Positions 4,139-43,293 of a stretch of 64,000 nt of DNA are shown piece after piece. Source of the DNA: Chara braunii. Taxonomy: Eukaryota > Plantae > Charophyceae. A model generated the notes under the pieces. The model was not told where the DNA came from and made no database searches. It saw only the letters and a program-made list of their open reading frames with translations. The translations under genes and the position numbers were made by a program. The DNA lies in NCBI GenBank assembly GCA_003427395.1, contig BFEA01000020.1, forward strand, positions 5,553,154 through 5,617,153, given 5' to 3'. Position 1 is the stretch's first letter. Every line of letters starts with the position of its first letter.

Positions 4139-4176
4139 CTGTCTCTTATACACATCTAGATGTGTATAAGAGACAG
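4139..4176. other. Nextera mate-pair junction adapter (assembly artefact)
   Basis: CTGTCTCTTATACACATCT-AGATGTGTATAAGAGACAG, flanked by a duplicated ~65 bp segment. Confidence 0.97.
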
Positions 4177-8461: not shown

Positions 8462-8623
8462 TTTCTTTTCTTTTCTTTTCTTTTTTTATTTCTTTTTTTT
8501 ATCATCAGAACAGCCCGAGGTGGTGGTAGGGGTGCTGATAAGAGCAGACACCGCTTTCACTCTCGGGGAGGCTCCATCTATTGGTGGGGAGCTGCACCTG
8601 CTGGAAACCGGGTCCAGCGTCCC
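8462..8623 (-). mobile_element. GGGACGCTGG-core retroposon, long form
   Basis: Core, middle hairpin, TGCTCTTATCA motif, poly(T) on the plus strand. Confidence 0.75.
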
Positions 8624-9180
8624 AGAACAACATGTTGACTCGTTTACGCAGACATCTGAGTATGGTAACTGGTATCTGTACGGTCCATCCTCAAAGGAGG
8701 CGATTTCTGACTAGGGTTACACACCTACTCAGTATCCTAAGTTGGTTGCCTACATGACTGCTGTAATTTGATTATGCGGTAGTAAACCCGAGTCCCATGG
8801 CTGCTATCTCTCTTCACTCGTGGAGCCAGGCTCTATCACCAATGAATGGGCACCAGTACATCTAGGCAAACTAACCTCCCGTTCCCCAACCCCCACCCTT
8901 CGGAACATGAGTTATTTGAACAATGTTAAACAATATTAAACTGTATTATATATCTTTTGAGACTGCTACGAGCTGTGGGAATTTGGTCCGTATCCAAGAT
9001 TGCAGTTGAGGTTCCTGTACCTCTTCACTCATCCTCTGAGCGCCTGACTTGTCGTGCTCTGTTCTGGTACTTCTGCATGCGGGGTTTTTGGGGAGTATAG
9101 TCTAATCCCCTAACCCCCAACCCCTAGACCCTCAGCACATTACAGTCTCTTTCATTGCAAGTCATGGTAAGCTAGTGAAG

Positions 9181-9377: not shown

Positions 9378-9599
9378 GCCCCTTAATGACGAAAGTTCCC
9401 AGCTCTCATATATCTCCAGTGGTCTACCGCGTCTGTTGATGCTGTTGTTCGCCACAGTGTCTTGAAGACTTCCAGTTGTTCACATCGTTTGCAGCAGGTG
9501 TAGAGGCGGCGGGATGGTTGAGGCTCAGAGGTGGGAGGGGGTCGAGAGGGGGTGGTGGCGAAAGACGGCGGGATGATTGAGGCTCAGGAGACGGGGGGG

Positions 9600-10221
9600 G
9601 GTTCGGGGAGGAGGTGGTGGCGGGGGTAGTGAGTGGGGAGTGGGATGGGTTACTGCGGAGTTGGGGCAGGGGCGATTGTGTGGTGGGGATTCTGAGGGAT
9701 CAACAGAAAGTTGGTCGGTAGGTATGGGACTGCAAAATCATCTAGGGATCTTCTTTGCCAGAATGGTTCATCCGCCCTCCAGTTTTTCCATTGTAAATGG
9801 AGGTCGTCTAGGAGGTCAGAGAAGGCGTGGTGCGGGTCCTGCCAGATCTGGCAGTAGGTGTTGGCATCTCTTTCATTGTGATAGTTCTGTTTCATGGTTT
9901 TCCAGGCATATTGTGTGCGGGATCTGATCTCTTCCTCTATCGCCTGCTGTACTTGCTGCAGACCGTATTGGTGGTCTTTTCTCTCAAAGGAGCATCTAGC
10001 TCTCCAAGCTTGCATGAGAACGTGTAGTCTCATGTATGAGAAGTGGTTAGTGGCAAATGGAGTCCAGTGCCGTAGAAGATGTTGGTTTTTGCCTAGCAAG
10101 ATAAGGCCCAGGTCCCACGGGATATGTATGTTCGTGAGCGAATGGAACGCCGCGTCCCACCACCTCCATATTTGGGCAACCATCGGGCACGCCAACAGGC
10201 AGTGTTCGAGTGTTGCCCTGG
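9600..10221 (-). pseudogene. 3' end of L1-clade LINE ORF2 (second half of zinc-knuckle region)
   Basis: ATLEHCLLACP...IWRWW...WRARC; joins in frame to CTFCGRTTLPAR at 29195 once the insertion is removed. Confidence 0.85.
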
Positions 10222-10478
10222 AAGCTATGTGTCCCCCTAGGCCGTGGCTGCCTCCGACTCGGCCGCGGGCCCGCGGCCGAGTTCCTGCGCGGCCGTGCCA
10301 CGGCCCAGTGGGGGCGCACGCGCGCGGGCGGCGCACGTCGTCCCCTATGTGACTGCGGCAAAAAAAATTAAAATTTTCTTTTTTTTGGGGGGGGGTGTTT
10401 TTTTTTTTGATTGATTCATTGGTTTTTTTGATTGATTGATTGATTGGTAGGGGAGGGGTCCTCCCTCCCCTCCCCCCG

Positions 10479-10479
<1 letters not shown>

Positions 10480-10535
<56 letters not shown>

Positions 10536-12135
10536 AAAAAATAATAATAAAAGTTATAATCTTAGTTAATAATAAATATTTTTTTAATAGTAGTATAAGT
10601 AATAATAAAATAATAAAATAATTGAATAATAAATAATAAAATAATTAAAAATTAAATAACTATATAAGTAATATCAATTAAGTAATAATAGTATAATAAT
10701 AATGATAATAAGTAATCATAATAATAATAATAAAATAAATTAAGTAAAATAATTAAAAATTACTATTAAAAAATAATAATAAAACTTACCACCAACCCGG
10801 ATCCAGCTTTGTGTATCCTGGATATCTTATAAATTAAAGAATACTGTTACATTAAACTTTTAAATAGGGCCTTCACATACCCAGTACTCCCCCAATAAAC
10901 TACTGAATATGATTTCACGATATGGCACTCACCACGCCTCCCACAAAATGGAAACTATATCTTTTTATGCCAAACATACATTGACTGTAACACAGTTATG
11001 GGTCTCCATTGCAATGTATACAATGGCACTGATAATATAACTATACAACCCTCCCACGCAATTAAAAAAACGTTTCACACACGGTACCGCACTCCCAAGC
11101 AAATACACCCGCAACCCACAACACCACCACCCTGAAACGACACAACCGAGTACGCAATGAAAAGACACAGCACACGCGTGCTCGACAGTAAAAGAACAGA
11201 CAAAACACTGCTCCCGCCATAGCAAAAACTCCCCCTTATGAAAACGACAGCCGATAAGACAATACCCCACGGGCCGATACACATACAGACAAAAGAACAA
11301 CTGTACAACACTGACTCCTCGACGGCCATATCCATGCACACACTTACCGGATGCAATTATACCACGACTCACCCAAAATTTCAGCGCAACCCACACCCTG
11401 ATGCTCCGTACCTATCAAACATCACCAAGTGATTACCCCCCCCACCACCACCACTAGGCCCCTCACTTCTTGTTAAAATAACACACGCCACCCTCACCCT
11501 CGCATAACTTTGAATGGCGCAAAACAAGAAGTCGCAACACGACGCTTACAACCCACAAAAACTCGGATACACCACATACACCCCTCATAACTGGGCTTCA
11601 AACTCCGCCAAAATGGATCTCCTGCCCCTACCCCCAACCTACCTTACCTTTGGTATACCCTCCTTATACACCTNAGTTNCCTATCATATACTAATCCCCC
11701 GTAGGTTGCACACCCTCTTTATTATGCATCNTATATTCAAGAGATATNGCTTTTTCCATAANCGCTGGCGTCCCCGTGCACTAGCACACGAGTTCTCGCC
11801 TGCATGACATGCTCCTCTACCNCCTTCACGGCACAGNTGTTCCTCCGGTTCGGAGAGCTGTTCGCCTAGCAGTTCCTNCTCCTGGCGTCGGTGAGAAGTA
11901 CGTCCGTTCACNGGACGCTCAGCTTACGNTGAATAGCGATCTGACGTTTCGCTACGCAAGCGCACACAGTGNTATGGCGGCGACTGATCCTCAAGCTGCA
12001 CCGATCTTGACCTCTCAGGTAAGGATTNATAACCATGGTCTACCTCCTGCACACTCTCCCCCTTCTATCCCGTGCTTCCCTGCTCTCCCGAAGCGACCTT
12101 TTTTCTTTCTTCCCCAATACTGCTAACCGGAGCTN
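10480..12135 (+). repeat. Left pseudo-LTR (shared part)
   Basis: Matches 26431-28029, starting at (CA)n then an AT-rich tract; first ~500 bp differ by SNPs and a ~30 bp indel. Confidence 0.9.
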
Positions 12136-12143
12136 ACACTAAT

Positions 12144-12194
12144 CCCTCTGATGAGCTGCTATAGGTGTTAGGCAGTGAAAAGCGCGCTTAAGGG
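12144..12194 (+). ncRNA. Type I hammerhead ribozyme with palindromic stem III
   Basis: CCCT-CTGATGA-GCTGC(tataggtgttag)GCAGT-GAA-AAGCGCGCTT-A-AGGG: stem I CCCT/AGGG, cores CUGAUGA and GAAA, predicted cleavage after UUA (12190). Confidence 0.85.
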
Positions 12195-12803
12195 CGTGCA
12201 CACCCCCTACGATTGGGATTTGTCCCTCTCCTAACATCTAACCTACTAACACTAATTACTAATTCCACCATGCTCCTTAAAATAACTCCCCCAACTCCTT
12301 TTTTTTTTTTTTTTTCCCTTCACTCCCCGTTTATCTAATGATTTTGGATGTCATTCGAGTCTCCCTGCATAATGTACATGCAGACTAACTACTAATGAGA
12401 TCTTCGTGAGCTCCACCGCCGGTTTCCCACGCCACGTGGGATGACCGTGTTTCGTGCACAAACCCCCCCACACACACACCCGGATCGATTGATCCAGTTG
12501 CTAGGCATGGGGTAGACTCCCCTGCTGACCTGTTGGACATAGCTCAAGCTTACCTTCCCATCCTTACATAATGATACATCCATTTAATTTCTCCCACCCC
12601 TTCCCTGATCCCACATATAATATACATCGCTCCTTTTCACTACGATACATAATGCATACACAACAATTACATGCGCAACCCTGACATACGTAAACTTGTG
12701 CCCATACCATATACAGAAACACTATCATACCTTAAACCCACACCCATAGACCCGCTGCTACCTTGCCCTCTTCTGCCCGCACTCCCCCTTCCCCCCTCCC
12801 CCC

Positions 12804-12913
12804 CACATCTAGATGTGTATAAGAGACAGGGGGGTGGTGGCAAAAGACGGCGGGATGATTGAGGCTCAGGAGACGGGGGGGGGTTCGGGGAGGAGGTGGT
12901 GGCGGGGGTAGTG
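12804..12913. other. Partial Nextera junction adapter plus chimeric copy of ~9548-9631 (artefact)
   Basis: CACATCTAGATGTGTATAAGAGACAG followed by sequence duplicated from 3.3 kb upstream, then Ns. Confidence 0.93.
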
Positions 12914-13149
12914 NNNNNNNNNNNNNNNNNNNNNNNNNTCCTCTCCCCAACCGTTACCCCATATATCGCATGTATTGCACAACCGGTATGCACCATAACC
13001 ATACAAATGCTACACCTATACGTTCGTTATATCGCAATTTCCTTGCATAACCCCCAAACCATTCATCACTAACTATTAACTCGCAGCTAACTCCTAAGCA
13101 CATTCAGTATTCGATGTTAAAGCTTTAAGATTAATCTATGATTTCAACC

Positions 13150-16100
13150 CACAGATCAATTGGGGTTGCCAGAATAATTCTCTGGCGAAAGTATTGCTCA
13201 TGAATTCTCTTTTGTGTCTCGTTTCTCTTAGTTAGAATAGTTGAGATCTTGCGTGTACTCACTACCCTCTGCCAACAAATGGTTGTCTCTTTGGAATTGC
13301 TTCACAAGGATCCATTACACGCGATTGCGCAAAAAGATGATAACAAAAATGCGATCAATACTAGCAACGCCTCTCAATTATTTTGGGTCCTTGAAAGCTA
13401 ATCACACATCAAACTTAACTCATTCCCCTGACTCATAGTAAGAGATGCCCCTGGTGCCTATTGGATTTATACTTTCGCGACTTATATACAACTCTCGCTG
13501 CTTCAGATGGACAGGTAATACTAAAACAAGTAGTACTAATACGCATGCACTTATAAACGGATGAGTTGTTTTATCGGTATTACCAGGATATGTGTGCCAG
13601 CGCTAAACGCAGTTTTTTGTTTTCGACAATACTGCGGGGCGTCGACTTCTGCAGGATAAAATTTAATCGCTTTCCCTTTTTGTTGTTTGATTAGTAGTCT
13701 TGGACATTGCGCACGATATCAATAAAACACGTAATTCCACGATTTATAGTGTGGTTCCTTGATTTTCCTCCCCCCGCCACCACTCCTTCATATATACACA
13801 GCATCGCCTATTATTCATACGATATTAGATCGGAAGCATTAATACATCACTTATTAGAAACATAGTAAACACCCGTTTGTCCTACATACACGATAATTAA
13901 GTCCCTTTAGCATATGCAGCCACACTATAATACCTTAAACCCATGATCTGCAGATGCGTACTCCTTCTCCTTTCCGCCCCCTCCCCCTCACCTCCCCCAC
14001 TACATTCTACATCGAGCCCCTAATGAAATATACTACATACCGATCTGGAAAGGTACGATGAGGTTTTATACTTTGGGCTTGTGATTATCCAGGCTATTCA
14101 CGATTAGCATATACGACCCATGACAATTAGTACCCCGATCTGGCTCATCTTTAGCAAATTACATACAGCGAATTCCTCTACACTCTCTTAACAAGTATAA
14201 ACCATTCTTATTAATCCTAACTGGCTTTCGGCGTTTTTAATTTCCCTTTACACGTGTCTTTGCGATTAAACAATCTCCTTACAATTACCCCCCACTGCAA
14301 AAAAATGCTCATGTCCGAAATTTCACCTACCACGTCATTCAAGCACCATGTGGAACTGCCCTCGCACTTATCCCGTGTGTGAAGGGTCCAAATAATGAAA
14401 CCATTACCCCCGACCTACATTGTTCAAACAGATAGATGTAATATGCTTTCCTCTAAATATCTAATCATCGAAAATTAATCTGTGTTTGCTTGATTGTCAC
14501 CATGCAGGATATATTTCTTGACGAATAATGTTGAGTGACAAATACTTACTGCCTGCAATCTAAACTGTTCTCCGCTCATAAATAGACGTTGCTTGCTGCT
14601 CAAACTCTCCCGCCCCGTCTTCCATGAACATCTACCTAATATGCTTCTGATCTCACGGATGAACTCTATCACGCTGCCTTTCCCCAACTCCCTAAGCAAA
14701 CTCGCTTCCCCATTATACGCGTCTCTGTCTTAGACAATCCTTGAAAGTAAAAGTCACATGTTCTCGCTAATTGATGATTTCCGCAGGATTTGGTCTACGT
14801 ATCAAGATAAATAGGTGAGTATTTTTTGGAGCTTAACCAGTGATTGCCTTGACGATGGCTCGCTACCCATAAAGATTGTCAACTATTTTTGTAGCTTGTG
14901 TTGCGGTACGATGAAAAATGTTGTCCGAGGCATCTCTCTTAAAATCCGTGGACTCTCCCGCCCCGCTCTCCTGGACATTTGTCTTATATAAAGATGACCG
15001 GGATAATGCTTACTGCTCTTTTTAGACTATTGCCTCTCTTATAGAAAAACACTACTTCACCGTACCTTCATATACGGCATGGCGTTTGACAACTGCTGAA
15101 TGAAAAATTCATAATTCTCTCCTTTTGAATATGGTTATACCAAGACTCTACTAAGTTTAAAAGCAGATGACGATAAGAGTAGCTTTGCACATCAATTTCT
15201 CTGGGCCTCCTCTTCCGACCCACTATTTATGTAAATCTTTTTTGTACGACTCCGATGCACATACGACTTTCGCAACTCAGCCATTACAGGTTATTCTTGG
15301 AGGGAATCGTCACCCCTTAAAACTAACCATTCAAATACATATTGCCGGTACTTAGCAGGATAAGTTATGTCGTATCATGCTTGCTTCTTATGAATAACCT
15401 AAATCTCGGCCCCCATCCCTACTCACTGGTAGAGCTGGTTTGCTTAATAAGCTTAGCCCCTTTCCATAACTCACGAAAACTTCCATAATACAAGCACTGC
15501 TTCGAAAACTTTCGATAATGTGAATACTGGCGTAGAACGCATAATAGATCAAGATGCATATAATGACGTCTTGCACCACTTTCAAAACATAGCTACTTCA
15601 CCAATTCCTAGATCGGCACGTGTACTTATAAATATCATGGTGGTTTACGCGACAACGTCATGCCCTCGTGCGATAATACGTTTCGATTGCCTCCGGAAAA
15701 TATTCCATACTTACACTCCATAACTCAAGCCTAGCTAAAACTTTATAAGACCCCTGTTGGTTACGCAATAGACATAATACATGTAAACAAACTACACCCT
15801 CGTCTTGCACACAAATCCCGACGTTAGATGGAAACGGATCTGGTCTACTAACACCACCTTACTCAGACGATTTACGACTAAAAGTCTACTTAAAAGCATG
15901 GCCATGACATCTCGACCATAGGAACACACGAGTGGTAATAGTCAGATATTAGGATACATGAGCATTGTTGGCAGTGCAGTATTACTATCTGATCATCGTG
16001 TCTGGTTAAAGTTGACCTCTGTGTGTGGCATTACGGTAACTCCTGATTGCCCTCGGACGATGATAAGCTCAAGTCCCGAGAACCAAAAAATTGTGGACTA

Positions 16101-18400
16101 ACTACTTGCTAGTTATTAAAACATCATGACACATAGAAAACCCCTGGCTAAAAATACTAGGGATATGGATAGGCTAATCTATAGATTAGGTAGGATGTAC
16201 GAAGGAGAATATTAGGTCGACACCTATTTTTTCATAATTAATCCCTGTATATATAGTACAAAATTGTATGTACCAGTAATTCTGCTTGGTTCTAGACAAG
16301 ATACCGGACATACTAATTTAATAATACCCATTGTAGTATATTACGACACAGCCTCAAAACAAAGGAATATTCATAATGACCAGTTTATTAGACACAGAGG
16401 AGAATTTTTTTTATCAGAAAAAGATAAATCATACTTAATACGAAAGTAAACTATACCTAGTGCGCATATCGATCATCCAATCCCAAGACAAGACGACGAT
16501 GGTCTGATACTCGCCCCCTCCTGAATTGCTTATGATTAATATTGGTGATAGACACCTGCCTGTATGACCTGCCAAAACCATGCACCTATTATTTAAACAT
16601 CACTGTGATGGACATTACACGTTTGGAACCTCACTTTACACATAACACGACTACCCTGACTAGGACATAGTCGCTTAACGTAGACTGTGTATCAGCCATT
16701 CAGTTTTTTGAAATATATGCTAGTTTAGCAAAACATGTTCTGTATCCGTGCCTACAGCTTCCCTGATGATGAGAATAAGTCAATATCCTCTACTGATACA
16801 ATCTTGATACTTCCCGTTTCAAGGTAGGGAAAAACCTTGACGGGTTTACCCGAAGTTAGAACGTCATCAACACATTAAGTTATACAACTTTTTCCAGAAC
16901 ACGTTTGTAAATTCCCTTTTATGATATAAGTTATGGCTACTTTAAAACTTTCCATATTGCTCGCTCCGCATAAAAATGAAGGCGCATATCATGCCCTACA
17001 TACACAAACCTCCCCGAAAAAATTCTTTCCTGTTGCCAACTCTCACTGTTGCGTACAGGCAACGAACACATTAGATAAACACTCACACATATCCTGACGC
17101 CATTGTGTACGATTGGTAGGCTAACAGGGTACAATGACCTCCCTATATGGCCATAAGACCTTTTTTCATACTTATCAGAAAAACCAATCTTACGCTTGTA
17201 GCCATACAAATTTTTAGAAAATGCGCACCATAGACAAAAACAGTTATGTATTTAAAACCAAAATTCACCCGACTCTACAACTAAAATAGTTGACACTCTA
17301 CCATACACACCATGACAAGATCCACAATAAATGTCGATCACACATTCGAATCTTTTATCCAGATGTCCTTATTCGATAGCACACACAACTCAATCAGCGT
17401 CCCTAACCGTGTTACTAGCACGAACTGGTTAAATCACACGTGCGGCCGGCCTGAATCTTTCGTACCAATCAACCACGCTATGCACTTAGTCCCCTGGTTC
17501 CCTTAAAGATCCACCGGAAAACTCGGGACTATCTATAAACGGCTACCTGGCGAAACTTTGCCATACTCAAATGGTTACCACGGATAGTTATCCCCAATGC
17601 GCAATACACCTCGCATACCCCTACGTTCTTGTAAGGGGGGTTCCATTATTGCCTCCCACTCCACGAAATCCACCTGACGACCATCATGCTCCTGTAACAG
17701 ATCGCTTGTCACGAGATCAACCATTTCTGCCACCACATCTACTCCACCACCCGGAACTGAATCTGGTATATCTTTGTGCACCTTTCTTACAAATACGGTA
17801 CCCTCACACAAATTTTCCGCATCATATCCCAACCCCACGCTCAACTCTAAAGCCAGTGCCTCATTCGTCATTACACGATAATGACGCACCGCGGATTCAG
17901 TAACCCGGAGACTGAATCGATAATCCAAACCCTTTTTGTCTCCCCGACGATGGCGTAGCTCATGCACCATTATTGCTCTACCACGAACATCCCCCACACA
18001 CGTGGTTACGATATCCATACTGCCGTGACAGACTCTCCTTCCCCTTCCTCTCGCCCTTGTTCCTGCCTTCTTCGTTGTTCTTCCCCCAACTGCTTTCTGG
18101 TATTCCCTTCTTCCTCCCCCTCTCCCTCTCGCTCTCGCCTCCCCGACCACTCTTATCTCGCCGTCTTTCAAATACCCAAGATAATCCTCCGTTAATTCTT
18201 CCTAAGTGGCCAAAAAACCATCGTTACCATGAGTGGTTACTGTTACCACCTCCATACCTGACCCATGAGCCCACAACTGATGGCGCAGATCCACCCCGCT
18301 GCTCACGACTAAACTACAGTCTTCCCTCCTTATATACTGATCAGCCACCTGGATCGATAAAACAATAACGCACATGGATCGATAAAACAACACATACCAT
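13150..18400 (-). pseudogene. Possible decayed multi-exon gene of unknown function inside the PLE
   Basis: 198-aa ORF (17575-18171), 90-aa and 74-aa ORFs and protein-like frames broken by stops, some ending at GT donor-like sites; no family recognised. Confidence 0.3.
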
Positions 18401-18721
18401 CCCCCTTGCAAATACTGAGATGAGCGAGTTACCGCCCTTCGCGAATTTTTTGTCTTCAAACACCCTAGGGCATGACAAACCTTACAAACCCCTTATTACC
18501 CCCATATGACGCACACATATGGGATCTATAAACGATTAATATATGGAACCCCTGTCGTCAACTACGTACAAACCCTATTCATTATCTGATCCAAAATACC
18601 TCCACCCCACCCGACCTACTTTGTTAATTAAAATAAAAAACAATAAATTAATAAAAAATAATTGATAAATATCAAATCAACTAAGAAATAAATTTGTATA
18701 AAATACTAAAATGTTTGAATT

Positions 18722-18752
<31 letters not shown>

Positions 18753-19618
18753 AAAAAAATAAAAATAAAAAATAAAAAATAAAAAATAGAATAAAAAAAA
18801 TTAATACAATTTATTTTATAAAAATATATAAATAAATTTATAAAAATAATAAAAACTTTTAAATACAAACTAGACAAAAAAAAAAAAAAAAATTTATAAA
18901 AAGGGTTTTCCTCTTCACTACTGACTGATTCCCCATGCATCCACCTTCAGTCTATACAGCCCCCACGAGTCTAGCCAATTTTTTGAAAAAACTATAACTG
19001 TTAAACAGTAGAAACATGAATGCTACGATCTCTTACATACATGATCTGCACCCTGACCTGCAATGATAACCCGGACGTGACGATCCAAGACATACCGCAC
19101 CCCTAATGCCCTCTACGTCGTCCCTGTCTATGACTTACTGGGCAAACCAGATCGACACACAGAGTACAAACCTTAAAAGTATAATAAAAATTTAAAAAAT
19201 AAAAAATAAAATTAAGAATAAAGAAAAAATAATAAATAGTACTATAGGAAGCCCACTTTCACAGAGACGCACATCTGCCAGATTAAATAAGCTACCCAAT
19301 GACACATTCGCAACATTATACTATGCCCACTGCGAATCACAACCATATTGCTATGCCACCTAAAAATAACTCTACAGGCTAAAACAATAACCAATTAATC
19401 GTTGTTGATACCTTGCATCCCTCCTACGTTTCAGACCACTTACTCCTAAGTCATACAAATAATGCATTCCTACCCTGTATAGACAACAAAAAAACATACG
19501 CATACAATGCCCAACCTACAGTTGCCTCTACCATCGCACACAGAGATTCCTAAAACCCCCCTGCTATCTTTCCCTCAAAAGAACACCCGCTATATCCCTG
19601 CACTAACTCTCGTCGCGC

Positions 19619-22430
19619 GTGTGTAACGTTGTGCAGGACCAGGACAGTATTCAGATGGGATGGCACCCGGAGCTGGTCACGGCCATTAGACCGTTCTCCG
19701 CCCTTAAGCCACCCAACGTACACTGTCAGATAGCCATGCTGGCTATCCCTGCTGATGTCCTGCTACGTGTACACGTAGCCTCGAACGGACATGCTCCCTT
19801 CCTAATAGAGAATCTATCCTTCAGTGATTGGGCGGCCATGGTCGCGGTAATGCAAACTAGGCCCCATGAACTTGAGGATAAGATCAAGGAGCTTGCCTCC
19901 AACATTGCAGAAGTCTGTAGAAGGTCTGCCATTGAGAACAGAGAGCTAAGCCTCATCATCGCTAAGGCTGAGAAGATCATACTCGAGCTCCACGGATACG
20001 ACACCGCGCATCTGGACTGCGCAGGTCAGATTTCCATAAACGAGAGCTCTGAGACCTTCACAGACATCTACATCAATAGTATTGCACGCACTCCTGCAGA
20101 GTTAGATTACTTCAAGAAGAAGAAAGCCTTGAGAAGGGACAATGCCCACATGAAGATCTCCAGCACGTCTGGCGAGGCCAACCACAAGCTCGGCAAGAAC
20201 AGCTCCTTCTTACCTCTCGCATCGAGCACATGGACAGAAAAAGCGGTACAATGGGTCCACAACAGGCTATGGAAGTTGAACTCCTTCAATTATACAGCAC
20301 CGATTAGTGTGGATGCCTACATGGCGCTAGCTGGGCTGAATGATGCAGACATAGACAACTGTCGAACTGCTGCCAAGAACGCGACCATCCACTTTCCTGC
20401 TGGACGAGCCGGCTATGATGCGGACTTCCTGCCAATTGCCAAACTGGAGGAAGGCAAGTGTCCTAAAAAGTCGCTGCTTCACCAGAAGGGTATTCCCAGG
20501 TTTCCCACAGACCTACTTGAACTCAAGAAGCTGTGGAATGCTGGGAGACCGTTTCTCAAGTGCCCATGCATTAGCTGTGAGTTGAACTTCACATGGCTGG
20601 ATCATATGATCTGGTACATCATCGGTAACCTCGACAAGTTGGACCCGAATGCACCATCAGACAAGATCCGCATGCTCGAATTCCAAGCACTGCTGCGCAC
20701 TACATGGAGAAGACCAATTCTGGCCCAGATCACGTTCCTGTTCATGCGTGAATACATGATGAAGATCGTTCATCTCATCACGCAGAACAAGAACATCTCC
20801 GCTGAAGAAATCCTCGCTTTTGAAGATTTCCATAACGTACCATTTGTACGGAAGTTCACTGCAGCACTCCTCCCTAACGCTGAAGGACTTCTCACGCCAA
20901 GCACAACCAGAAGAAATGGTGCCATAGACTTCGAGGACAACTCCTTGCGCAGATGCCGCCAGATCAGACTTGGTACTCCTGCCTCTGGCTTACCTGCAAT
21001 GCACTCATCTGCTACACATACACCACCCGCCTCTACCAATGCGCACGCACAGTCACCACTACTAGGCACTGCTACTGCGAATGCACATGTTCTCCAAACC
21101 ACTCCACCGGCCTCAGATCCTATAATCCACAATGCTGCTTCCATTTCAGCACCTTAGCCACTGAGACAACCTGGCCCGATCACGCAACCACCTCAAGCTG
21201 CAAACTCCCGCCCCTCTCACGACACGCCCGGTATGCACACTCACAATAGTGGTCACACACTACGCAACACCCAAAATGCACAGCAGAGCCACATAAACCC
21301 ACCACACATCAGCCACCCTTCAATACGCCCCAACACACAGGCCGGCCCACTGCCCATTCCCACCATCGTTCCCACTACTCCGTGGCACGCTATTGCCCCC
21401 CCTGTTCCTCATGTGCAAGTAAACACCTTCACCTTCGCAGCGGCTCAGCAAGCCGCCAGGAACAGTATCTCCCCCAACCCGAACACGTCACGTACAAGCC
21501 CTTTCCTCTCAATGCAAAGTACTGCCACTGCAAACATCTTTACTGCACCTGACCTAATCCCCACCACCACAGCCCCCACACCTCTCGGCAACACCAACAC
21601 CACTGCGCAACCGGCTCCGCACCTCACCACAGAAGCAGAAAAGCTTGCACAGAGAACGGAGCAGCTACTGTGAATTGCAATGAGCCCGCTGCCTGCTGAG
21701 AAAAGAAGGAATACCCGCAGAGGAAACAAGACCACCAGAATACAAACAGGGTTGGGTAATGGTCAGAAGCAAAAGCGGCCAAGGCGTAGCAATCTGCAAT
21801 ATGACAACCGACAACCATATATGGATGATATCTTCCATGTACAAGCACAAAGACAGAGCACCTCTGCTTCGCACACGCTTTCCCTGTTGGCTGCTCAGCA
21901 AGCCATCACTGCCAACCCTCATGCTATCGCTGGTACGGTCCCAGCTATAGCGGACCAAATGCCTCAGTCTGCACGCGCATGGATCCCAACCACTGAGGAA
22001 CTACTACAACAATGGCCACAACGACTCGGTAATGAGAACATGCCACGATAGCCGCCTGCACAGACGAACCCGGAGGTCATCCCAGTAAGCAGCAACGAGA
22101 TTATTGATGGTGGAAGACAACAACTCCCAATCAGCATCAGCTCACCATCTCCAGAAACGCCGCTACGACCTACGAATGTTGTCGAGGCTCTGAGACACAA
22201 CTATGGAGCCAGCAGTGCGGATTCATCGCTCCTCCGAACATCCAGCAACCAAACAGCACTCGACACCGAAGCTACCTCTTCAGAAGAATCATGGAAAAGA
22301 GTCTGGCGCAGACTCAGCCCGGACTACATGAATGGCACTACGAGCATCGCTAGAAGCTGAGATGCACCAGACTGACATAGACGGACTGTCTCAGATGATA
22401 ACCAAACTCTTAGACCTACTAACTGCATCC
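19619..22430 (+). pseudogene. PLE accessory ORF (~900 codons): globular N-terminal part with predicted coiled coil and CxCxxC, then P/T/Q/A-rich tail
   Basis: ORFs 19619-21157, 21233-21673 and 21680-22051 share one frame, separated by single stops (TAG, TGA, TAG); probable acceptor TTGTGCAG near 19637. Confidence 0.65.
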
Positions 22431-24135
22431 CCTTACCCCGTTTCACCCCTGACTGTCTGGATCCCTTGCTCTATTTTGCCCTACCCCCCCGCACCTGCTA
22501 GTGCTCCCCCTCCCCCATCCTTCCATCTCTGTTTCCAGCGCCTTTTTCCCCCCCTCCCTTCCTCTATCACCCCCCTCCTCTACCCAAGACCTCCCCCCTC
22601 CAATCTCTGTCCCCTCCTCCAATGCACACAGTCGCCACGTCTCGCTCTCCCCCTCCCTTCATACACCTCTCCCAATTTCCTATGCTCCCAACCCCGCTTT
22701 CTCCCTTCTTCACCACCACCCTCTACTCAACCCAAAGACTCCCCCTAATGCTCGCCCTCACCTGCCCTCAGTTCCCCTATCTCGAACCCTCTCGCTTTCC
22801 CTCTCTCCCGCTCCCCCGCTACCATCGGCCACCCCTCTCCCTCTCACACCGTCAACCCCTCCTATTGCTCCCATTATTCGTTGTATGCTCACCACTGGAT
22901 TTAGTACCGCATTAGCTGTAGCATCACGTAGCTGATGTGAAATCTGAGCCATAGGATACACCCTCACCTTGGCATTCCTATTTCAGCACTACGAGTAGCC
23001 CGGCAGGCAGATTATAAATAAAGATGCTATCTACCCTAATAACAGGTTGAGCAGCTTTCACTGAAAAGGCGGTGGCCATCACTTGGTGATCTGTAACATC
23101 GCAAAAATAAATCTGAAATGATAAGCAGTACTCTGCTTTCAAAAGATACTGGTACCTACTCCCAGTTGCTACAAGCAGATACTCGGCGCGGTTTTCATAG
23201 CTTTGTATTTAACGTTGTAGCTCATGACAGTGGCAAATGCCTGATGACTTCTACTAAGTCTTGAGTTGGAATGATACAGGCAATCTCGCCTGGTACCTTG
23301 GAAGTTGCATGAAATTTTGTTATCGTTCTTACGTATGCTAATATAAGACTGTTTCGCAGTTTTCAGAAAGTTAAATTTTGTTCCTTCTTTTCTTGATTTT
23401 AAATTTTCTATTTCTTTCTTTTTCTTTATTAATTTATTATTATTTTTTATTTTTTATTTTTTTATTTTTTTATATATTTATTAAATATTTTTTATTTTTT
23501 ATTTTTATTATTTTTTTGATTTATTATTTTCTTTTCTCATGAAAGTACCCCATACTTCCAGGCGTGCCAGTATAATATATGCTGACCTTGCATCAACACG
23601 TGTCCCCCATGCGGTTTTGTTGTATCTAGGGATACCATAAAATAAACTTCTACCCTCCCTTTCGTACCCGCTAAAAGATCAGGGACAACTAAAAACTATA
23701 TATTTTTTTAAAAAAACCTATACGCGCGTTCCCTACCTGAGAATGGTGGGTAACCATTGACTCAGCAATATTAAACACTTACCCTGGGAGAACAAGATCT
23801 TGAGTCCTGTTGCCAAAAACCACCATGACACCGCACACTGATGTTCTCTGCCAAATACTGTAAAACGCCACAAAATTTTTTGTCAACATAACCACCGCCT
23901 ACCCTTTACTTACCTATTGCCCAACCCAGAAACAACGAAGCAGGTTCGTCCCTATCTAGCAACCAGGACATACAACACACTCCACCTATGACCCGCCAAC
24001 ACATACCTGGCATACCGTAACATACAAGGCCAAAAAGCAGCACACCCACCGAACCCCCAACAAGTATAATATACACTACAAATATACGCACAACCAGCAA
24101 CGACTTACTCCCTCAAGTTGAACAACAAATAGCCA

Positions 24136-26302
24136 ATGGCTATCAGTATGACTTTAACCACATTTGGCACGCTGTGTGTGCAGGTACATCGGCTACAGAC
24201 CATGGAAGATGGAAGATTTGGCTGGAAAGCCCCCAAAGAAGATGACAAGATTATTATCGCATGCCACTACACCAACCGTTTAATGGACAGAATCAAATTC
24301 AAAAAAATATTCGATAAAATTCTGAAAAAATACAATTTGAACGCACTCCCGCTCCTGAACAAATGCACGTTCTCCTGGACCTATAATGATCAGATTGCTA
24401 AAGCCCTATATAAACCCGTTGCGGTCTTCCGCGACTTCACGATCACAGAATGGATGAACCAAACACAAGAGATTTGTTTTTGCCAGCATCAAAGGTATGC
24501 TGCATTCACTACCCCCCTACCGCCTGAACTAATCCAACCAGAGAACAATGCACACGTCCTCACGTTAAATCTTAACATTATTTCCAACAAGGAATTGCAG
24601 AGACTAACCCGGTGCGGACTAAACCATATCCCCGCGCAGACCCCCAACCAAAATGAGACCTTGGAGGCTGCACACCAGGTTTGGGAAAACCTCTTAAGCA
24701 TGCTGGAACGGAATGGTGCACCTATGCCAAACGAGCACTTACCACTGGCTTGCAAGGAGTTCCTTAGCATCATACTACGAATGACTTCCAACATGCGGCA
24801 CCACAGAGAAACTAACCTTAACGACCATGCAATCAAGCACGAAATAGACTTCCTCACTAGGCACTTCTACATTTCCGGTGCTGATAAAGCACCTAATACT
24901 CCTGTTGTTATCTGCATTAACTTGGTTAGACAGTTAGCCTTGCGAAGACTCACCAGCCCCGACTTTGAACCCTGCCTATGCACTACCAATGAGTTGATCA
25001 CTCATCTTGAACTAGAACTGACTTCTAGGTTCCCGGACATCCCAATTGGCAAGAAAACATTACCCTACCTCTTTGCCACCTACAAGAAACACAAAAACTC
25101 GTTCCGATGGTTAACTAACGCCTCAGACATCATATCATCCCCTCTCGCTGACCTCACCGCTGAGATCCTGAAAACACTCATCAAAGTAGTGAAAACACAT
25201 TGCGGAGGATTAACACTGCAAACCTTCGCAAAAACCGGACTAAGGGTCCCATACTGGTGGCCCATAGATTCTACAGCAGACTATGTCTATAACCTACCAT
25301 CACAAGCAATGTCAGTCTTCTCTGCAGACATAACTAGATGTTATGAGACCATTCCTACTGACAGTAGCCCAGACGGCCTCCCCAACGCACTCCAGTTTTT
25401 TACAAAAATAGCATTCCAACAGGCCAAGGCATCCTTTGGCAATGGCATACAACTTGCCTTCAAATTCTATTACAAAGCAGACCTGCTTACCCCCACCTGC
25501 GACTGGTTTCACCACCCCCCCCTCCGGATACCTAACGCTTACTGGTGAAATGGTCAATACCATCAGCAACTGGCTCATCACTAACGCATATACCTCGCTA
25601 GGTAACGTAGTCTGGAAACAGACGCTAGGCATCCCTATGGGTGTCAATTGCTCGCCTATGTGGTGTAATATCTACTTCTTCAAATACGAATATAAATTCA
25701 TGAAGAAGATGACTCATAAAGCCAATAAACACCTGCTTCCCCTATTTCAGCATGTGTTCCGATACTTCGATGACCTCCATGTCATCAACAACCCAATAAT
25801 ACAAGAATTCCTCAACCCCGAAATAACAAGCACAAGAAGCAAGTTCTTCCTATACCCCCTGCACCTCATCACCATTAACGAACAGACCTCAGAAAAAACG
25901 CAAGACCACAACAGGAATATCGGAATCAAAACTAACTTCCTTAACGCAACAATCGAAATCACTGACATAATCACCGGACAATACAAAACCTACAAATATG
26001 ACAAAAGACGGGATTTGGACTTCACAATCACCCGATTCATACAAGCACACTCCAACAGACCAACACAGCAATCACTTAATCTGGTCATTCCTCAAATCAT
26101 CACGATAATGCTTATCGAAACCAACGCACAACATGCGGCCTCCGAAATCAAACACATTATTAACTGCCTGGTGCATAACGGCTTCCCAAAGCACATACTT
26201 TTTGGCATCATTAGAAGGATACTACAACACCCAGAAGAGTACCAACCCTTCCGATGTTGCCCACAAACTGTCCTGCACCAGCTTCAAGACTATCCTATAT
26301 AA
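24136..26302 (+). CDS. Penelope-like reverse transcriptase (CxC linker plus RT), one +1 frameshift
   Basis: CFC...HVLTLNLNIISN..L..L...G linker; ADKAPN; LPYLFATYKKHK..FRWL; SADITRCYETIP; QTLGIPMGVNCSP; RYFDDL..NNP; YDKRRDLDFTI..F...SNRP; frames overlap at C8 run 25515-25522. Confidence 0.88.
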
Positions 26303-26430
26303 ATAACACCAGAACAAAAATATAAACATGTGTGTGTGAAGGAGGACCTACCCCGGGTGGGGTAGATCCTTAATCCAATGCAAAAAAGACCTACCCCACC
26401 CGCTCCTCCATCACGAGGGAACGGGGAGGG

Positions 26431-28029
26431 ACACACACACACACACACACATAAAAAAATAATAATAAAAGTTATAATCTTAGTTAATAATAAATCTTTT
26501 TTTAATAATAATATAAGTAATAATAAAATAATAAAATAATTCAATAATAAATAATAAAATAATTAAAAATTAAATAACTATGTAAGTAATATCAATAAAA
26601 TAATAATAGTATAATAAAAATGATAATAAGTAATAATAATAATAATAATAATAAAATAAATTAAGTAAAATAATTAAAAATTACTATTAAAAAATAATAA
26701 TAGAACTTACCACCAACATCTTATAAATTAAAGAATACTGTTACACTAAATTTTTAAATAGGGCCTTCGCATACCCAGTACTCCCCCAATAAACTACTCA
26801 ATACGATTTCACGATATGGCACTCACCACGCCTCCCACAAAATGGAAACTATATCTTTTTATGCCAAACATACATTGACTGTAACACAGTTATGGGTCTC
26901 CATTGCAATGTATACAATGGGACTGATAATATAACTATACAACCCTCCCATGCAATTAAAAAAAACGTTTCACACACGGTACCGCACTCCCAAGCAAATA
27001 CACCCGCAACCCACAACACCACCACCCTGAAACGACACAACCGAGTACGCAATGAAAAGACACAGCACACGCGTGCTCGACAGTAAAAGAACAGACAAAA
27101 CACTGCTCCCGCCATAGCAAAAACTCCCCCTTATGAAAACGACAGCCGATAAGACAATACCCCACGGGCCGATACACATACAGACAAAAGAACAACTGTA
27201 CAACACTGACTCCTCGACGGCCATATCCATGCACACACTTACCGGATGCAATTATACCACGACTCACCCAAAATTTCAGCGCAACCCACACCCTGATGCT
27301 CCGTACCTATCAAACATCACCAAGTGATTACCCCCCCCACCACCACCACTAGGCCCCTCACTTCTTGTTAAAATAACACACGCCACCCTCACCCTCGCAT
27401 AACTTTGAATGGCGCAAAACAAGAAGTCGCAACACGACGCTTACAACCCACAAAAACTCGGATACACCACATACACCCCTCATAACTGGGCTTCAAACTC
27501 CGCCAAAATGGATCTCCTGCCCCTACCCCCAACCTACCTTACCTTTGGTATACCCTCCTTATACACCTNAGTTNCCTATCATATACTAATCCCCCGTAGG
27601 TTGCACACCCTCTTTATTATGCATCNTATATTCAAGAGATATNGCTTTTTCCATAANCGCTGGCGTCCCCGTGCACTAGCACACGAGTTCTCGCCTGCAT
27701 GACATGCTCCTCTACCNCCTTCACGGCACAGNTGTTCCTCCGGTTCGGAGAGCTGTTCGCCTAGCAGTTCCTNCTCCTGGCGTCGGTGAGAAGTACGTCC
27801 GTTCACNGGACGCTCAGCTTACGNTGAATAGCGATCTGACGTTTCGCTACGCAAGCGCACACAGTGNTATGGCGGCGACTGATCCTCAAGCTGCACCGAT
27901 CTTGACCTCTCAGGTAAGGATTNATAACCATGGTCTACCTCCTGCACACTCTCCCCCTTCTATCCCGTGCTTCCCTGCTCTCCCGAAGCGACCTTTTTTC
28001 TTTCTTCCCCAATACTGCTAACCGGAGCT
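26431..28029 (+). repeat. Right pseudo-LTR (truncated by N gap just before the hammerhead position)
   Basis: Matches 10480-12135. Confidence 0.9.
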
Positions 28030-28473
28030 NNNNNNNNNNNNNNNNNNNNNNNNNNNNNNNNNNNNNNNNNNNNNNNNNNNNNNNNNNNNNNNNNNNNNNN
28101 NNNNNNNNNNNNNNNNNNNNNNNNNNNNNNNNNNNNNNNNNNNNNNNNNNNNNNNNNNNNNNNNNNNNNNNNNNNNNNNNNNNNNNNNNNNNNNNNNNNN
28201 NNNNNNNNNNNNNNNNNNNNNNNNNNNNNNNNNNNNNNNNNNNNNNNNNNNNNNNNNNNNNNNNNNNNNNNNNNNNNNNNNNNNNNNNNNNNNNNNNNNN
28301 NNNNNNNNNNNNNNNNNNNNNNNNNNNNNNNNNNNNNNNNNNNNNNNNNNNNNNNNNNNNNNNNNNNNNNNNNNNNNNNNNNNNNNNNNNNNNNNNNNNN
28401 NNNNNNNNNNNNNNNNNNNNNNNNNNNNNNNNNNNNNNNNNNNNNNNNNNNNNNNNNNNNNNNNNNNNNNNNN

Positions 28474-28770
<297 letters not shown>

Positions 28771-29413: not shown

Positions 29414-29518
29414 CTTTTTTTTTTTTTTTTTTTTCCAAAGACAAGGCTCCATCTATTGGTGGGGAGCAACACCTGCTGGAAACCGGGTCCAGCGTCCCAT
29501 AGATACAACCATATCCTG
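29414..29518 (-). mobile_element. GGGACGCTGG-core retroposon, short form, inserted in LINE ORF2
   Basis: Core, middle hairpin and poly(A) interrupt the ORF2 frame; 5' leader GGATATGGTTGTAT shared with the copy at ~44996. Confidence 0.75.
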
Positions 29519-36500: not shown

Positions 36501-39041
36501 GGAATGTGGTTTGCGGAGAGGCAGTATCCTTCTGTGGTGGCCTGAGGCCCAACACCCAATGCCCCCCTTCTTTTATTCTGGTGAGGGGGAGGATGACAAC
36601 CCCTAGTGGCATCACAACCGGGGCGTTGTCATCCTCCTCCAGTCTCACCAGTTGCCTCAACCTTTTGGGGGAAGTTTCAGAGGTATGGTCTTCGTCTGTC
36701 TCAACCAAGCATTCATCCTCGTCATCATGGATAATCTCAACCACCGTGGACCGATACATTCATGAGCTGGGGTGGTGGGCCCACAGCCTATCGAATCAGT
36801 AATTGGCCCTGCTGCGGGCCACATCCAAGGTTTGGTGGGCCCACAACCTGTCGAATCAGTAATTGGCCCTGTTGTGGGTTACATCCAGGGTCTCGTGTGG
36901 GGGGTGGGCTGTTCTGGTGGCCTACGCCACCGTGATAGTTACCGCTTCCCGACCCTGTAGAGGTCAGATCTGGGAGGGTATACAGCGTGTTACACAGCTC
37001 ATGAATCAGCACTTTGGGCCAAGCTAGGCCTTCATGGAAGAAAGCCTCAGCTTGCGTTTGTGTTGGCCCGTGGGGTTTTTGGTCCTCCTCGACCCCAAAT
37101 GTGTGGTTCTTGTATGCTTCAATTTTGTCAAGAAACTCATTTACGACGAGGACGATCGCTGCCCCCACATCCATCTTCAAGTTGTCAATGACAATCACAT
37201 TCTCGTATTTCTCCACCATTGCCAACACTCGCGAACTGTACATGAGGACAGTTTTTGGTTCGCCCCAATGTTCAGTTTTTAGTCTGTCAGCTGGTCTGTC
37301 ATCCGACAGTGAGAATATCTTCACTAAAGTCCATTCCGTGAGAAATTCTAGCTTTTGTTTGACCTCGTTGTTGGCCACCATAGGGAGGGGCAGAGAGCAG
37401 TCTTCCTTGCTCTTTGGTAGTACAGAGGTTGGCAGTTGAACTTCCACGTCCGTAGGCGAGTATTGCTGGTGCTGTTAAGGCTCCGGGAGGTCTATCGGGG
37501 CCGAGGTATCCACATCTTGGGTCCGGCGGTCTTCTATTTGGGGAATCGGCCCGTCAGCGATTGCCTTCAGCTGATGTTTGTGGTTCTCAGGCATGTCAGT
37601 TTGATTTTCAGCTTGCTGTTGCCAGAACCTCTGTAGTTGTTCCTGTTGCTGCTGGAGCACCTGTTGGTGTTGCCAGCATAGCTGCTATTGCCATTGTAGG
37701 TGCATGTGCTGGAGGGGTTGTTGCTTTTGTATCATTCTCTGTTGGTGTTGCTGTTGGTGATACTGTGCCAGCTGGGCTTGCAGTAGGAGGTGGTATTGTT
37801 CGTCGTGTTGCCTGTGCTGCATGGCCTGTTGCTGTTGAAGTTGCTGGGTTTGTTGCCTCGTTTGGAGCATCATGTGGAGTTGTGTTTGGTGCATGCCCTG
37901 TACTTCCCGATGCTGGGTTTGTACATGTTGTGCCTGCTGCAGTTGTGCGTGGTGGAGTGAGTGGAGTTGCACTTGGTGATGGTGTTGCAGGCGTAGGTGT
38001 TGTTGCTGGGCATTCTGCTGTTCCATTTGCCCCCACTTGTGCTGTGTCTGGTGGGTCAGTTCTTCCGGTGGCACTTGGCAGGGCAGCGGCTGTTGTTGTT
38101 GCTGTTGCCGGGCGCCCTCCTGCTCTTGGCGTTGTGTGTGCATATCTGGGCAGAGAGGGATTTGATGCTGCAGCAGGGTTTGTGGTTGCTGCTGCTCGGC
38201 AAGCCCAATCATGTGTTGTTGTTGTTCCAGGCACAGCTGCTCAGTGTGTATGATTATGTGTTGTTGCTGTTCCAGGCAGAGCTGCTCAGTGAGTATCTGT
38301 GGCAGTTCCGTCTGTTGGGTCTGCATCTGGGTAGGGGACAGCGGCTGGTCCTGGTGTATGGTATCCTGCTCCCCGTACGGTTGGGAGATATCCGGGTTGT
38401 GGTGGAGCTGGGGAGGCCGCTCCGGTTGGTGTAGCAGTCGGGGCTGGTGCTGTACCTGCCGTTCTTGTTGTTCCTCTATCACCCATTTGAGTGACTTCCG
38501 GGAGGCAGCTCTTGGAAATTCAATGTCGCTGGTCAGCAGCTTGGCGGGAAGGAATTTCCTTTTTCCTGTGATATGAGAGACAAGAGGATTGACGGGGGGG
38601 GGGTTGAGTCGTTTTCTGATTTTTTCCTATTTCTTAAAAAAAAAAAGCCTAGTAATAGGTTAGCAGATAGGCAAGGCAATGATGGTTTGATGACTTTGAG
38701 ATGGGATGCTGGACCCGGTTTCCAGCACAGGGCGGCACCTGTTCCATTTCTCTTACCACCACCAGGATGGAGGTCTTGCACATGGGGCCTTAAAAAAATG
38801 AAAAATAAAAAATAAAAAAAGTTATCCATGTATTCCTTAAATTTCCAGAACCTTTTTCATAAGTTCTCAGACTGTTCTTAGCCGAAGCCAGGTAATGGCC
38901 CTGGTATCTCAAATCATTTCTCGAATCATTTGTATAATTCCGTATGGGACGCTGGGCCCGGTTCCCAGCACGTGTTGCTTCCCACGAATAGTGGTGTTTG
39001 CTCTTATCAGCACCACTAGCATTTACTTGGGTTGTTTTCGT

Positions 39042-43114: not shown

Positions 43115-43293
43115 CTGTCTCTTATACACATCTAGATGTGTATAAGAGACAGCCCTAGTACCTAGGAAGGGAAACGCTCGGGCAGAATCTGCATACTCAA
43201 TTTCGATTTCAAACTCATGTACATTATCATCATCATCACTTACACAGCATTGTAACTGTCTCTTATACACATCTAGATGTGTATAAGAGACAG
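43115..43293. other. Two Nextera junction adapters (43115-43152, 43256-43293) with an artefactual ~100 bp duplication
   Basis: Exact 38-bp junction adapter twice. Confidence 0.97.

What the first reader, a model, noticed from the sequence alone, without database searches (positions are those of the whole stretch)
12144..12194. Hammerhead ribozyme with palindromic stem III at the pseudo-LTR edge
Seen: all core nucleotides of a type I hammerhead. Stem III AAGCGCGCTT is a perfect palindrome with no room for a stable loop, the form known from PLE-associated hammerheads thought to cleave as dimers. The first stem II pair is G-U instead of G-C, possibly from CpG decay. The right repeat reaches the N gap about 10 nt before this motif. 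Prediction: a second copy lies in the gap near 28040-28090, so one transcript could be cut into a unit-length RNA.
Basis: partly seen in the sequence, partly recalled or inferred. Interest (0 to 1): 0.8.

Follow-up and report, generated by a model that had tools for sequence, protein, structure and literature searches.

The report
Hammerhead ribozyme motif in algal retroelement
A complete-looking self-cutting RNA motif (type I hammerhead) sits on the sense strand next to the long direct repeat of a decayed 16-kb Penelope-like jumping element, most likely of the alga Chara braunii. This is a known pairing, so the find is real but ordinary, and this copy is probably weakened.

Summary
The motif is there as described, at 12144-12194 (+). 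It has CUGAUGA, GAA, the A15.1-U16.1 pair, H17 = A and a 4-bp stem I. Stem II is 5-6 bp and starts with a G.U pair. Stem III is the 10-nt perfect palindrome AAGCGCGCUU. A descriptor of this shape hits once in the window and in 3 of 300 simulated windows.

It lies on the sense strand of a ~15.9-kb element with 1.6-kb direct repeats. The element's reverse transcriptase has the CxC and DKA motifs and no visible GIY-YIG endonuclease. Its closest named relatives are Chara braunii and Selaginella proteins. This matches the endonuclease-less Chlamys/PLE-X type, for which Craig et al. 2021 already report hammerheads in C. braunii. Palindromic helix III and dimer action are described by Cervera & De la Pena 2014.

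Caveats:
- No Rfam hammerhead model matches.
- Predicted folding favours a competing hairpin.
- The copy is dead (three in-frame stops, one frame shift).
- No other family copy could be fetched, so conservation is untested.
- The "repeat edge" is set by an assembly gap, and the last 1.08 kb of both repeats is a collapsed consensus. The predicted second copy cannot be tested; I put it at about 45%.

The scan noted similar ribozymes on other DNA of this genome.

The parts
12144..12194 (+). Type I hammerhead ribozyme motif. Stem I 12144-47/12191-94; core CUGAUGA 12148-54; stem II 12155-59/12172-76 with a G.U first pair; loop II 12160-71; GAA 12177-79; palindromic stem III 12180-89; H17 = A12190. 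Predicted cut between 12190 and 12191.
   Evidence: no Rfam match
12182..12199 (+). Competing hairpin (GCGCGCU / GGCGUGC) that takes up stem III and the 3' strand of stem I. It is -11.3 kcal/mol, and its pairs are 84-98% populated in the predicted ensemble.
10513..12134 (+). Left long direct repeat (pseudo-LTR). It begins at a (CA)27 microsatellite (10480-10533).
   Evidence: 96.9% identity to 26431-28029
26431..28029 (+). Right long direct repeat. It begins at an internal (CA)11, 130 nt after the RT stop codon, and runs into the N gap.
28030..28474 (.). 445-N assembly gap. A second ribozyme copy would fall at 28039-28089 if the repeat continues. Beyond the gap lie (TC)n, (CA)23 and (CAAT)n.
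24136..25548 (+). First part of the reverse transcriptase ORF (470 aa) with the CxC motif (EICFCQ), the DKA motif and RT motif A (SADITRCYETIP). No GIY-YIG seen.
25436..26302 (+). Second part of the reverse transcriptase ORF (palm and thumb, FDD motif), in another reading frame. There is a frame shift within the 25436-25548 overlap.
   Evidence: RVT_1, E = 7.7e-4
19607..22357 (+). Upstream reading frame of about 917 codons with no family match, broken by three in-frame stops (TAG at 21155, TGA at 21671, TAG at 22049).
12468..12484 (+). (C)7(AC)5CCGG stretch about 280 nt after the predicted cut. Candidate 3' end of the unit or tandem junction (inference only).
   Evidence: compare the target repeats
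12811..12938 (.). Assembly artefact: half a Nextera mate-pair junction adapter, then an 84-nt copy of 9548-9631, then a 25-N gap.

Best explanation
The motif is a genuine hammerhead ribozyme, or its slightly decayed relic. It belongs to an endonuclease-less Penelope-like retroelement of the Naiad/Chlamys 'PLE-X' type, most likely in Chara braunii.

It is transcribed as part of the element's sense RNA. In the family's working copies it would cut between H17 and N1.1, here 12190/12191. The upstream fragment would end in a 2',3'-cyclic phosphate and the downstream RNA would start with a 5'-OH.

Helix III is a 10-nt palindrome that cannot close on itself. The active form would therefore be a pair of ribozymes sharing one 10-bp helix III, either from two RNAs or from the two repeat copies of one long transcript, probably with help from proteins.

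Its likely role is trimming read-through or tandem transcripts of the element. This role is inferred, not shown.

This copy is probably impaired. It has U instead of C at 11.1 and a strong competing hairpin, and the element has broken reading frames.
For: - All invariant core bases and three helices are in the right order. The motif is unique in the window and expected in about 1% of simulated windows. For the 2-3 kb sense-strand zone around the repeat this amounts to about 2e-4.
- It is on the same strand as the RT ORFs.
- The element has 1.6-kb direct repeats and (CA)n at its borders.
- The RT carries the CxC and DKA motifs. Its best named relatives are eight Chara braunii proteins and one Selaginella moellendorffii protein. 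No GIY-YIG pattern or Pfam hit was found.
- Craig et al. 2021 (PMC8557442) describe this type in C. braunii and spike mosses: it lacks EN, has CxC, carries canonical hammerheads, and inserts at (CA)n or (C)n.
- Cervera & De la Pena 2014 (PMC4209133) describe PLE hammerheads with a short helix I (4-5 bp), a long helix II and a palindromic helix III, thought to act as dimers.
- The stem III duplex is -15.9 kcal/mol, against no stable hairpin.
Against: - No Rfam hammerhead model matches, even at E <= 10 on 91 nt.
- The G10.1-C11.1 pair, called highly conserved in PMC4209133, is G.U here.
- The predicted ensemble gives about 0 probability to stems I and III and 6% to stem II. A competing hairpin takes 84-98%. 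The fold energy is no better than shuffles, z = 0.11.
Scans of genome and viral contigs found nothing. Two distant metagenome relatives carry no hammerhead core.
- In the Anolis PLE, hammerhead mutants still inserted in vitro, and no RNA-seq reads ended at the cut site (PMC11167929).
Confidence: 0.75

Rival explanations
1. The ribozyme belongs to a separate, short, non-coding hammerhead-bearing element of about 345 nt (12136-12484). This element sits between CA-type stretches at the junction of a truncated and a full-length copy. A variant has the motif at the very 5' end of the full-length unit. In either case the true repeat ends at 12134 and no second copy lies in the gap.
For: - The right copy's contig stops exactly at the position homologous to the left copy's N at 12135. 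The preceding 1.08 kb is a collapsed consensus placed twice. This is what an assembly-graph branch at the true end of the repeat would give.
- 'NACAC' follows 12134 and (C)7(AC)5 lies at 12468-12484. The contig after the gap starts in microsatellite sequence.
- Unchecked notes of this scan report abundant short hammerhead-bearing elements in microsatellites of this genome.
Against: - A type I hammerhead stays on the upstream cleavage product, so it is inherited only if it lies in the 3' part of the template.
- The literature places PLE hammerheads inside the repeats, and a 3'-HHR in one Chara type.
- A gap of 445 nt has room for about 350 nt more of the element.
- An unchecked scan note reports hammerheads in both long repeats of another giant copy.
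Confidence: 0.17
2. The motif is a chance match to the hammerhead consensus in decayed, non-coding repeat DNA, with no ribozyme ancestry.
For: - There is no Rfam match.
- There is no thermodynamic signal.
- There is no conservation evidence.
- At about 0.01 hits per 64 kb, a genome of gigabase size would hold hundreds of chance hits.
Against: - The site lies on the sense strand, a few nucleotides from the repeat of a PLE type published as hammerhead-bearing in this very species.
- The perfect 10-nt palindrome is in exactly the helix III position, a feature my descriptor did not require.
Confidence: 0.06

Closest known systems
Hammerheads of Chlamys-2_cBra and of the EN-less 'PLE-X' families of Chara braunii and Selaginella (Craig et al. 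2021, PMC8557442)
   Same: - Same host, by best protein hits.
- The RT has the CxC motif and no GIY-YIG.
- Pseudo-LTRs are present.
- (CA)n lies at the borders.
- The hammerhead is on the sense strand near the 3' repeat.
   Different: - The published sizes are 3.3-8.2 kb; this unit is about 15.9 kb, with a further reading frame of about 917 codons.
- The published ribozyme sequences are in a supplementary file that I could not read, so identity with a curated family is untested.
- The RT is only 33-37% identical to annotated Chara proteins.
Minimal and canonical type I hammerheads of Penelope-like elements (Cervera & De la Pena 2014, PMC4209133)
   Same: - It is type I.
- Helix I is 4 bp and helix II is longer than 4 bp.
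- Helix III is palindromic, which implies a dimeric active form.
- It is located in or at the flanking repeats.
   Different: - Helix III is a full 10-nt palindrome, rather than absent or 1-2 bp plus a 2-4-nt loop.
- There is no unpaired base between A9 and 10.1.
- The 10.1-11.1 pair is G.U, not G-C.
- The two copies would be about 16 kb apart rather than about 3 kb.
3'-terminal hammerhead plus reverse-complement telomeric repeats of Athena/Terminon EN-less PLEs (Arkhipova et al. 2017, as reviewed in PMC6431247)
   Same: - The element is giant, multi-ORF and endonuclease-less.
- The hammerhead is followed by short C/A-rich stretches (ACACCCCC at 12200-12207, (C)7(AC)5 at 12468-12484) that resemble the repeats it inserts into.
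   Different: - The site is not telomeric.
- The stretches are not telomere repeats, and the longer one lies about 280 nt away rather than immediately downstream.
- No evidence was gathered here that they pair with a target.
Dimeric hammerheads of newt satellite 2 and avocado sunblotch viroid (as summarised in PMC6155905)
   Same: Helix III is unstable in the monomer and extended in a double-hammerhead.
   Different: In those cases tandem copies lie a few hundred nucleotides apart in one RNA. Here they would be 15.9 kb apart or on separate RNAs.
Rfam Hammerhead_1 (RF00163) and the other Rfam hammerhead models
   Same: The core sequence and helix order are the same.
   Different: There is no match at E <= 10.

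Membership tests
Hammerhead ribozyme (type I) | Invariant core: C3 U4 G5 A6 N7 G8 A9, G12 A13 A14, the A15.1-U16.1 pair, and H17 not G | tested here: met
   12148-54 is CUGAUGA; 12177-79 is GAA; A12180-U12189 pair; A12190
Hammerhead ribozyme (type I) | Three helices around the core, with helix I open-ended | tested here: met
   Helix I has 4 bp and helix II has 5-6 bp. Helix III exists only as a palindrome (3 bp plus a CGCG loop, or a 10-bp duplex).
Hammerhead ribozyme (type I) | G10.1-C11.1 pair at the base of helix II | tested here: not met
   G12155.U12176 is a wobble pair. PMC4209133 calls the G-C pair highly conserved.
Hammerhead ribozyme (type I) | Match to a curated covariance model (Rfam hammerhead families) | tested here: not met
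   No hammerhead family appears at the gathering score or at E <= 10.
Hammerhead ribozyme (type I) | Helices kept by compensatory changes among relatives | not testable with these tools
   No other copy of the family could be fetched.
Hammerhead ribozyme (type I) | Self-cleavage at H17 | not testable with these tools
   This needs a bench assay. Fold predictions do not favour the active fold.
Penelope-like element, Naiad/Chlamys clade, EN-less 'PLE-X' type | RT with the CxC motif upstream and the DKA/DK motif | tested here: met
   EICFCQ and GADKAPNTP are in the 470-aa ORF. Both motifs are conserved in the alignment of relatives.
Penelope-like element, Naiad/Chlamys clade, EN-less 'PLE-X' type | Relatives in Chara braunii and spike mosses | tested here: met
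   There are 278 relatives. The eight named among the top hits looked up are Chara braunii proteins, and P0020 is from Selaginella moellendorffii (E = 1.9e-42).
Penelope-like element, Naiad/Chlamys clade, EN-less 'PLE-X' type | No GIY-YIG endonuclease | tested here: inconclusive
   No GIY...YIG pattern was found in any + frame of 12100-26450, and there is no Pfam hit. The Chlamys EN is divergent, and an N-terminal exon could lie behind an intron.
Penelope-like element, Naiad/Chlamys clade, EN-less 'PLE-X' type | Pseudo-LTRs from partial tandem insertion, with (CA)n or (C)n target repeats | tested here: met
   The direct repeats are 1.6 kb and 96.9% identical. The left one starts in (CA)27, and (CA)23 lies beyond the right gap.
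Penelope-like element, Naiad/Chlamys clade, EN-less 'PLE-X' type | Placement inside the clade on an RT tree with named reference elements | not tested
   No named reference PLE sequences were at hand. A PDB profile search gave nothing.

The most novel reading that the evidence does not exclude
The hammerhead, together with the C/A-rich stretches just downstream of it (ACACCCCC at 12200-12207, (C)7(AC)5 at 12468-12484), forms the 3'-terminal module of a giant endonuclease-less element. This module would let the element's RNA pair with exposed (TG)n or (G)n DNA ends inside microsatellites and prime reverse transcription without any nuclease. It would be an interstitial, microsatellite-directed counterpart of the way rotifer Terminons attach to telomeres.
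Probability: 0.1. Interest if true: 0.6.

Novelty: new member of a known kind. Interest (0 to 1): 0.25.

Why it matters
It adds one located example of a dimer-type hammerhead in a very large, endonuclease-less plant-lineage Penelope-like element. The role of hammerheads in these elements is still open. A family with a 10-bp palindromic helix III and copies 16 kb apart would be a hard test of the 'cut a tandem transcript to unit length' idea. As it stands, the finding confirms published knowledge rather than extending it.

Tried and rejected
- **Rfam.** I ran the whole window at gathering score, 601 nt at E <= 10 and 91 nt at E <= 10. No hammerhead model matched.
- **Other copies of the family.** The word-based protein search gave one Chara hit for the 470-aa ORF and none for the 288-aa ORF. 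The scan's own index by sequence was blank. A first alignment was too diverse for a locus search. The metagenome scan gave two distant loci (29% identity) without any hammerhead core. Genome and viral contig scans found nothing.
- **Loop II pseudoknot.** This lead came from a scan note. Complements of 5-6 bp exist in the flanks, but 66% of shuffled loops do as well, so I dropped it.
- **An ORF starting at the AUG of CUGAUGA, as in the Anolis PLE.** It stops after 6 codons (read).
- **Zinc knuckle (Chlamys-2 type gag).** No CCHC pattern was found.
- **Selenocysteine reading of the in-frame stops.** Two of the three stops are TAG, so I rejected it.
- **PDB profile search with the RT alignment.** It gave nothing.
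- **Pfam on the other ORFs of the element.** Nothing above threshold.
- **RT pieces.** The two RT pieces were searched apart and never joined.

Full report
**1. The observation**

The stretch 12144-12194 on the + strand reads as a type I hammerhead.
- Stem I is CCCU (12144-47) paired with AGGG (12191-94).
- The core is CUGAUGA (12148-54).
- Stem II is GCUGC (12155-59) paired with GCAGU (12172-76). Its first pair is G12155.U12176.
- Loop II is 12 nt, or 10 nt if U12160.G12171 also pairs.
- G12 A13 A14 lie at 12177-79.
- Stem III is AAGCGCGCUU (12180-89), which is its own reverse complement.
- H17 is A12190, so the predicted cut is between 12190 and 12191.

A descriptor written for this architecture finds this site only, on both strands of the 64-kb window. 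It finds at least one site in 3 of 300 simulated windows. A looser core-plus-stem-II scan also returns this site only. The motif is real and unlikely to be chance at the scale of a window. At the scale of a gigabase genome, chance hits would exist, so the context matters.

**2. The context**

The motif lies 10 nt past a 1.6-kb direct repeat. The repeat is 10513-12134 = 26431-28029, 96.9% identical, spaced about 15.9 kb apart. The whole 10-28 kb stretch is strongly C-over-G skewed on the + strand.

The + strand carries a reverse transcriptase in two pieces.
- 24136-25548 has a CxC motif (EICFCQ), a DKA motif and RT motif A.
- 25436-26302 has the palm and gives a weak RVT_1 hit.
- The two pieces are in different frames.

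Upstream is a frame of about 917 codons with no family match, broken by TAG, TGA and TAG. This copy is therefore dead.

A full HMMER search of the first RT piece found 278 relatives. The eight named among the top hits looked up are Chara braunii proteins (33-37% identity), and one strong hit is from Selaginella moellendorffii. The alignment of relatives keeps the CxC...RY, GLNHIP, TDKAxNTP, YKAHKxxFRW and ADITRC blocks. No GIY-YIG pattern or Pfam hit was seen in the element or in nine relatives. The left repeat starts in (CA)27, the right repeat starts at an internal (CA)11, and (CA)23 lies beyond the right gap.

**3. What is known**

Craig et al. 2021 (PMC8557442) describe three Chlamys types in C. 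braunii.
- One type (Chlamys-1_cBra) has long ORFs of about 1,800 aa and no hammerhead is reported for it.
- A second type has a canonical 3' hammerhead and a gag-like ORF.
- A third type lacks the endonuclease, keeps the CxC motif, has relatives in spike mosses and also carries canonical hammerheads.

They also report targeting of (CA)n and (C)n repeats. The element here fits the third type on every feature I could test. Its size (15.9 kb against the published 3.3-8.2 kb) and its extra ORF are not in that description.

Cervera & De la Pena 2014 (PMC4209133) describe PLE hammerheads with a short helix I (4-5 bp), a long helix II and a palindromic helix III. They propose action as dimers and a role in cutting precursor RNAs. 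They found low activity in vitro.

Frangieh et al. 2024 (PMC11167929) found that hammerhead mutants of an Anolis PLE still insert in vitro. They also found no RNA-seq reads ending at the cut site.

Notes of this scan on other DNA of the same genome mention type I hammerheads with a palindromic stem III. They also mention another giant endonuclease-less copy whose long repeats carry hammerheads. These notes are unchecked leads.

**4. Will this copy cut?**

Several things speak against easy cleavage.
- The 10.1-11.1 pair is G.U rather than the conserved G-C.
- The isolated stem III does not fold as a hairpin. As a duplex it is worth -15.9 kcal/mol.
- A competing hairpin (12182-12199, -11.3 kcal/mol) takes up stem III and the 3' strand of stem I. 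Its pairs are 84-98% populated in the predicted ensemble, and stems I and III have about zero probability.
- The 65-nt stretch folds no better than shuffles.
- No Rfam hammerhead model matches.

Nearest-neighbour models ignore tertiary contacts, and PLE hammerheads are known to escape standard descriptors. None of this therefore removes the ribozyme ancestry, but it lowers the odds that this copy is active. I put activity at about 0.3.

The U at 11.1 sits where a CpG would be (C11.1-G12). The two repeats differ by about 3%, so about one substitution in 51 nt is expected. The coding part is CpG-depleted (0.67) but the repeat is not (about 1.0). Decay is plausible but untested.

**5. The 'edge' and the predicted second copy**

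From 11058 to 12134 the two repeats are 100% identical. They carry 12 single Ns at identical offsets. The left copy's next N (12135) corresponds to the first base of the right gap. That part is therefore a collapsed consensus placed twice, and the right copy gives no independent evidence. There are two readings.

(A) The repeat continues through the ribozyme to a unit end somewhere within about 445 nt, for instance at the (C)7(AC)5CCGG at 12468-12484. A second ribozyme then lies at 28039-28089. The literature, the gap size, and the fact that a type I hammerhead stays on the upstream product all favour this.

(B) The repeat truly ends at 12134, an assembly-graph branch. The ribozyme then belongs to the 5' end of the full-length unit, or to a short separate element between CA-type stretches, and the gap is microsatellite.

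I put the second copy at about 45%. A leftover mate-pair junction at 12811-12913 shows that 9548 to about 12805 came from one 3.26-kb DNA fragment. The left repeat, the ribozyme and the 600 nt after it are therefore truly contiguous.

**6. Limits**

No other copy of the family could be fetched by any other route. Conservation and covariation, the decisive tests, were not possible. Two distant metagenome relatives of the RT (29% identity) have no hammerhead core. That agrees with the report that most Chlamys lack one and says nothing about this family. The two RT pieces were searched apart and not joined. Nothing in the window looked human.

**7. Verdict**

It is most likely a real but weakened hammerhead of a Penelope-like element type already published as hammerhead-bearing in Chara braunii, so it is a new member of a known kind and of low interest. 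The open points are the true unit end, the state of position 11.1 in the family, and whether a 10-bp palindromic helix III can work between copies 16 kb apart.

Noticed in passing
window 4139-4176, 43115-43152, 43256-43293, 12811-12829: Nextera mate-pair junction adapter sequence is left in the assembly. There are three full junctions and one half. The half at 12811 is followed by an 84-nt copy of 9548-9631 and a 25-N gap, so a chimeric mate-pair read was used in gap filling.
   Followed up: partly
window 11058-12134 and 26953-28029: The two stretches are 100% identical and carry 12 single Ns at the same offsets (15895 apart). The left N at 12135 matches the first base of the right gap. This is a collapsed repeat consensus placed twice.
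   Followed up: yes
window 44158-44265 (+): U6 spliceosomal RNA gene (Rfam RF00026, 67.3 bits), followed by a run of A instead of the usual T run.
   Followed up: no
window 10001-28000: Strong C-over-G skew on the + strand (GC skew -0.2 to -0.35) along the whole element. It ends at the element's borders.
   Followed up: no
window 28555-28673: Near-perfect 57-nt inverted repeat made of (CAAT)n / (ATTG)n, just right of the element. The same (TTGA)n motif lies left of it at 10407-10446.
   Followed up: no
window 8569-8624, 29443-29498, 40221-40274, 43554-43608, 45459-45511, 46328-46382, 47607-47660, 51828-51880, 52260-52312, 55556-55609: A dispersed repeat of about 54 nt (90-96% identity) at ten or more sites on both strands. 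It may be the shared 3' module of LINEs noted in a neighbouring window.
   Followed up: no
window 33706-34478 and 35977-36749: A 773-nt direct repeat (95.6% identity) around two large N gaps, with further 95-175-nt repeats between them. It may be another tandem or repeat-bounded element, or an assembly duplication.
   Followed up: no
window 17575-18171 (-): A 198-aa ORF on the strand opposite to the element's genes. It has only a sub-threshold Pfam hit (DUF6782, E = 0.007). A scan note on another giant copy mentions a conserved opposite-strand gene.
   Followed up: partly
L001 (6392 nt) and L002 (2368 nt), metagenome Ga0115006: Two environmental contigs encode RTs 29% identical to this one. 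They have no hammerhead core on either strand.
   Followed up: partly
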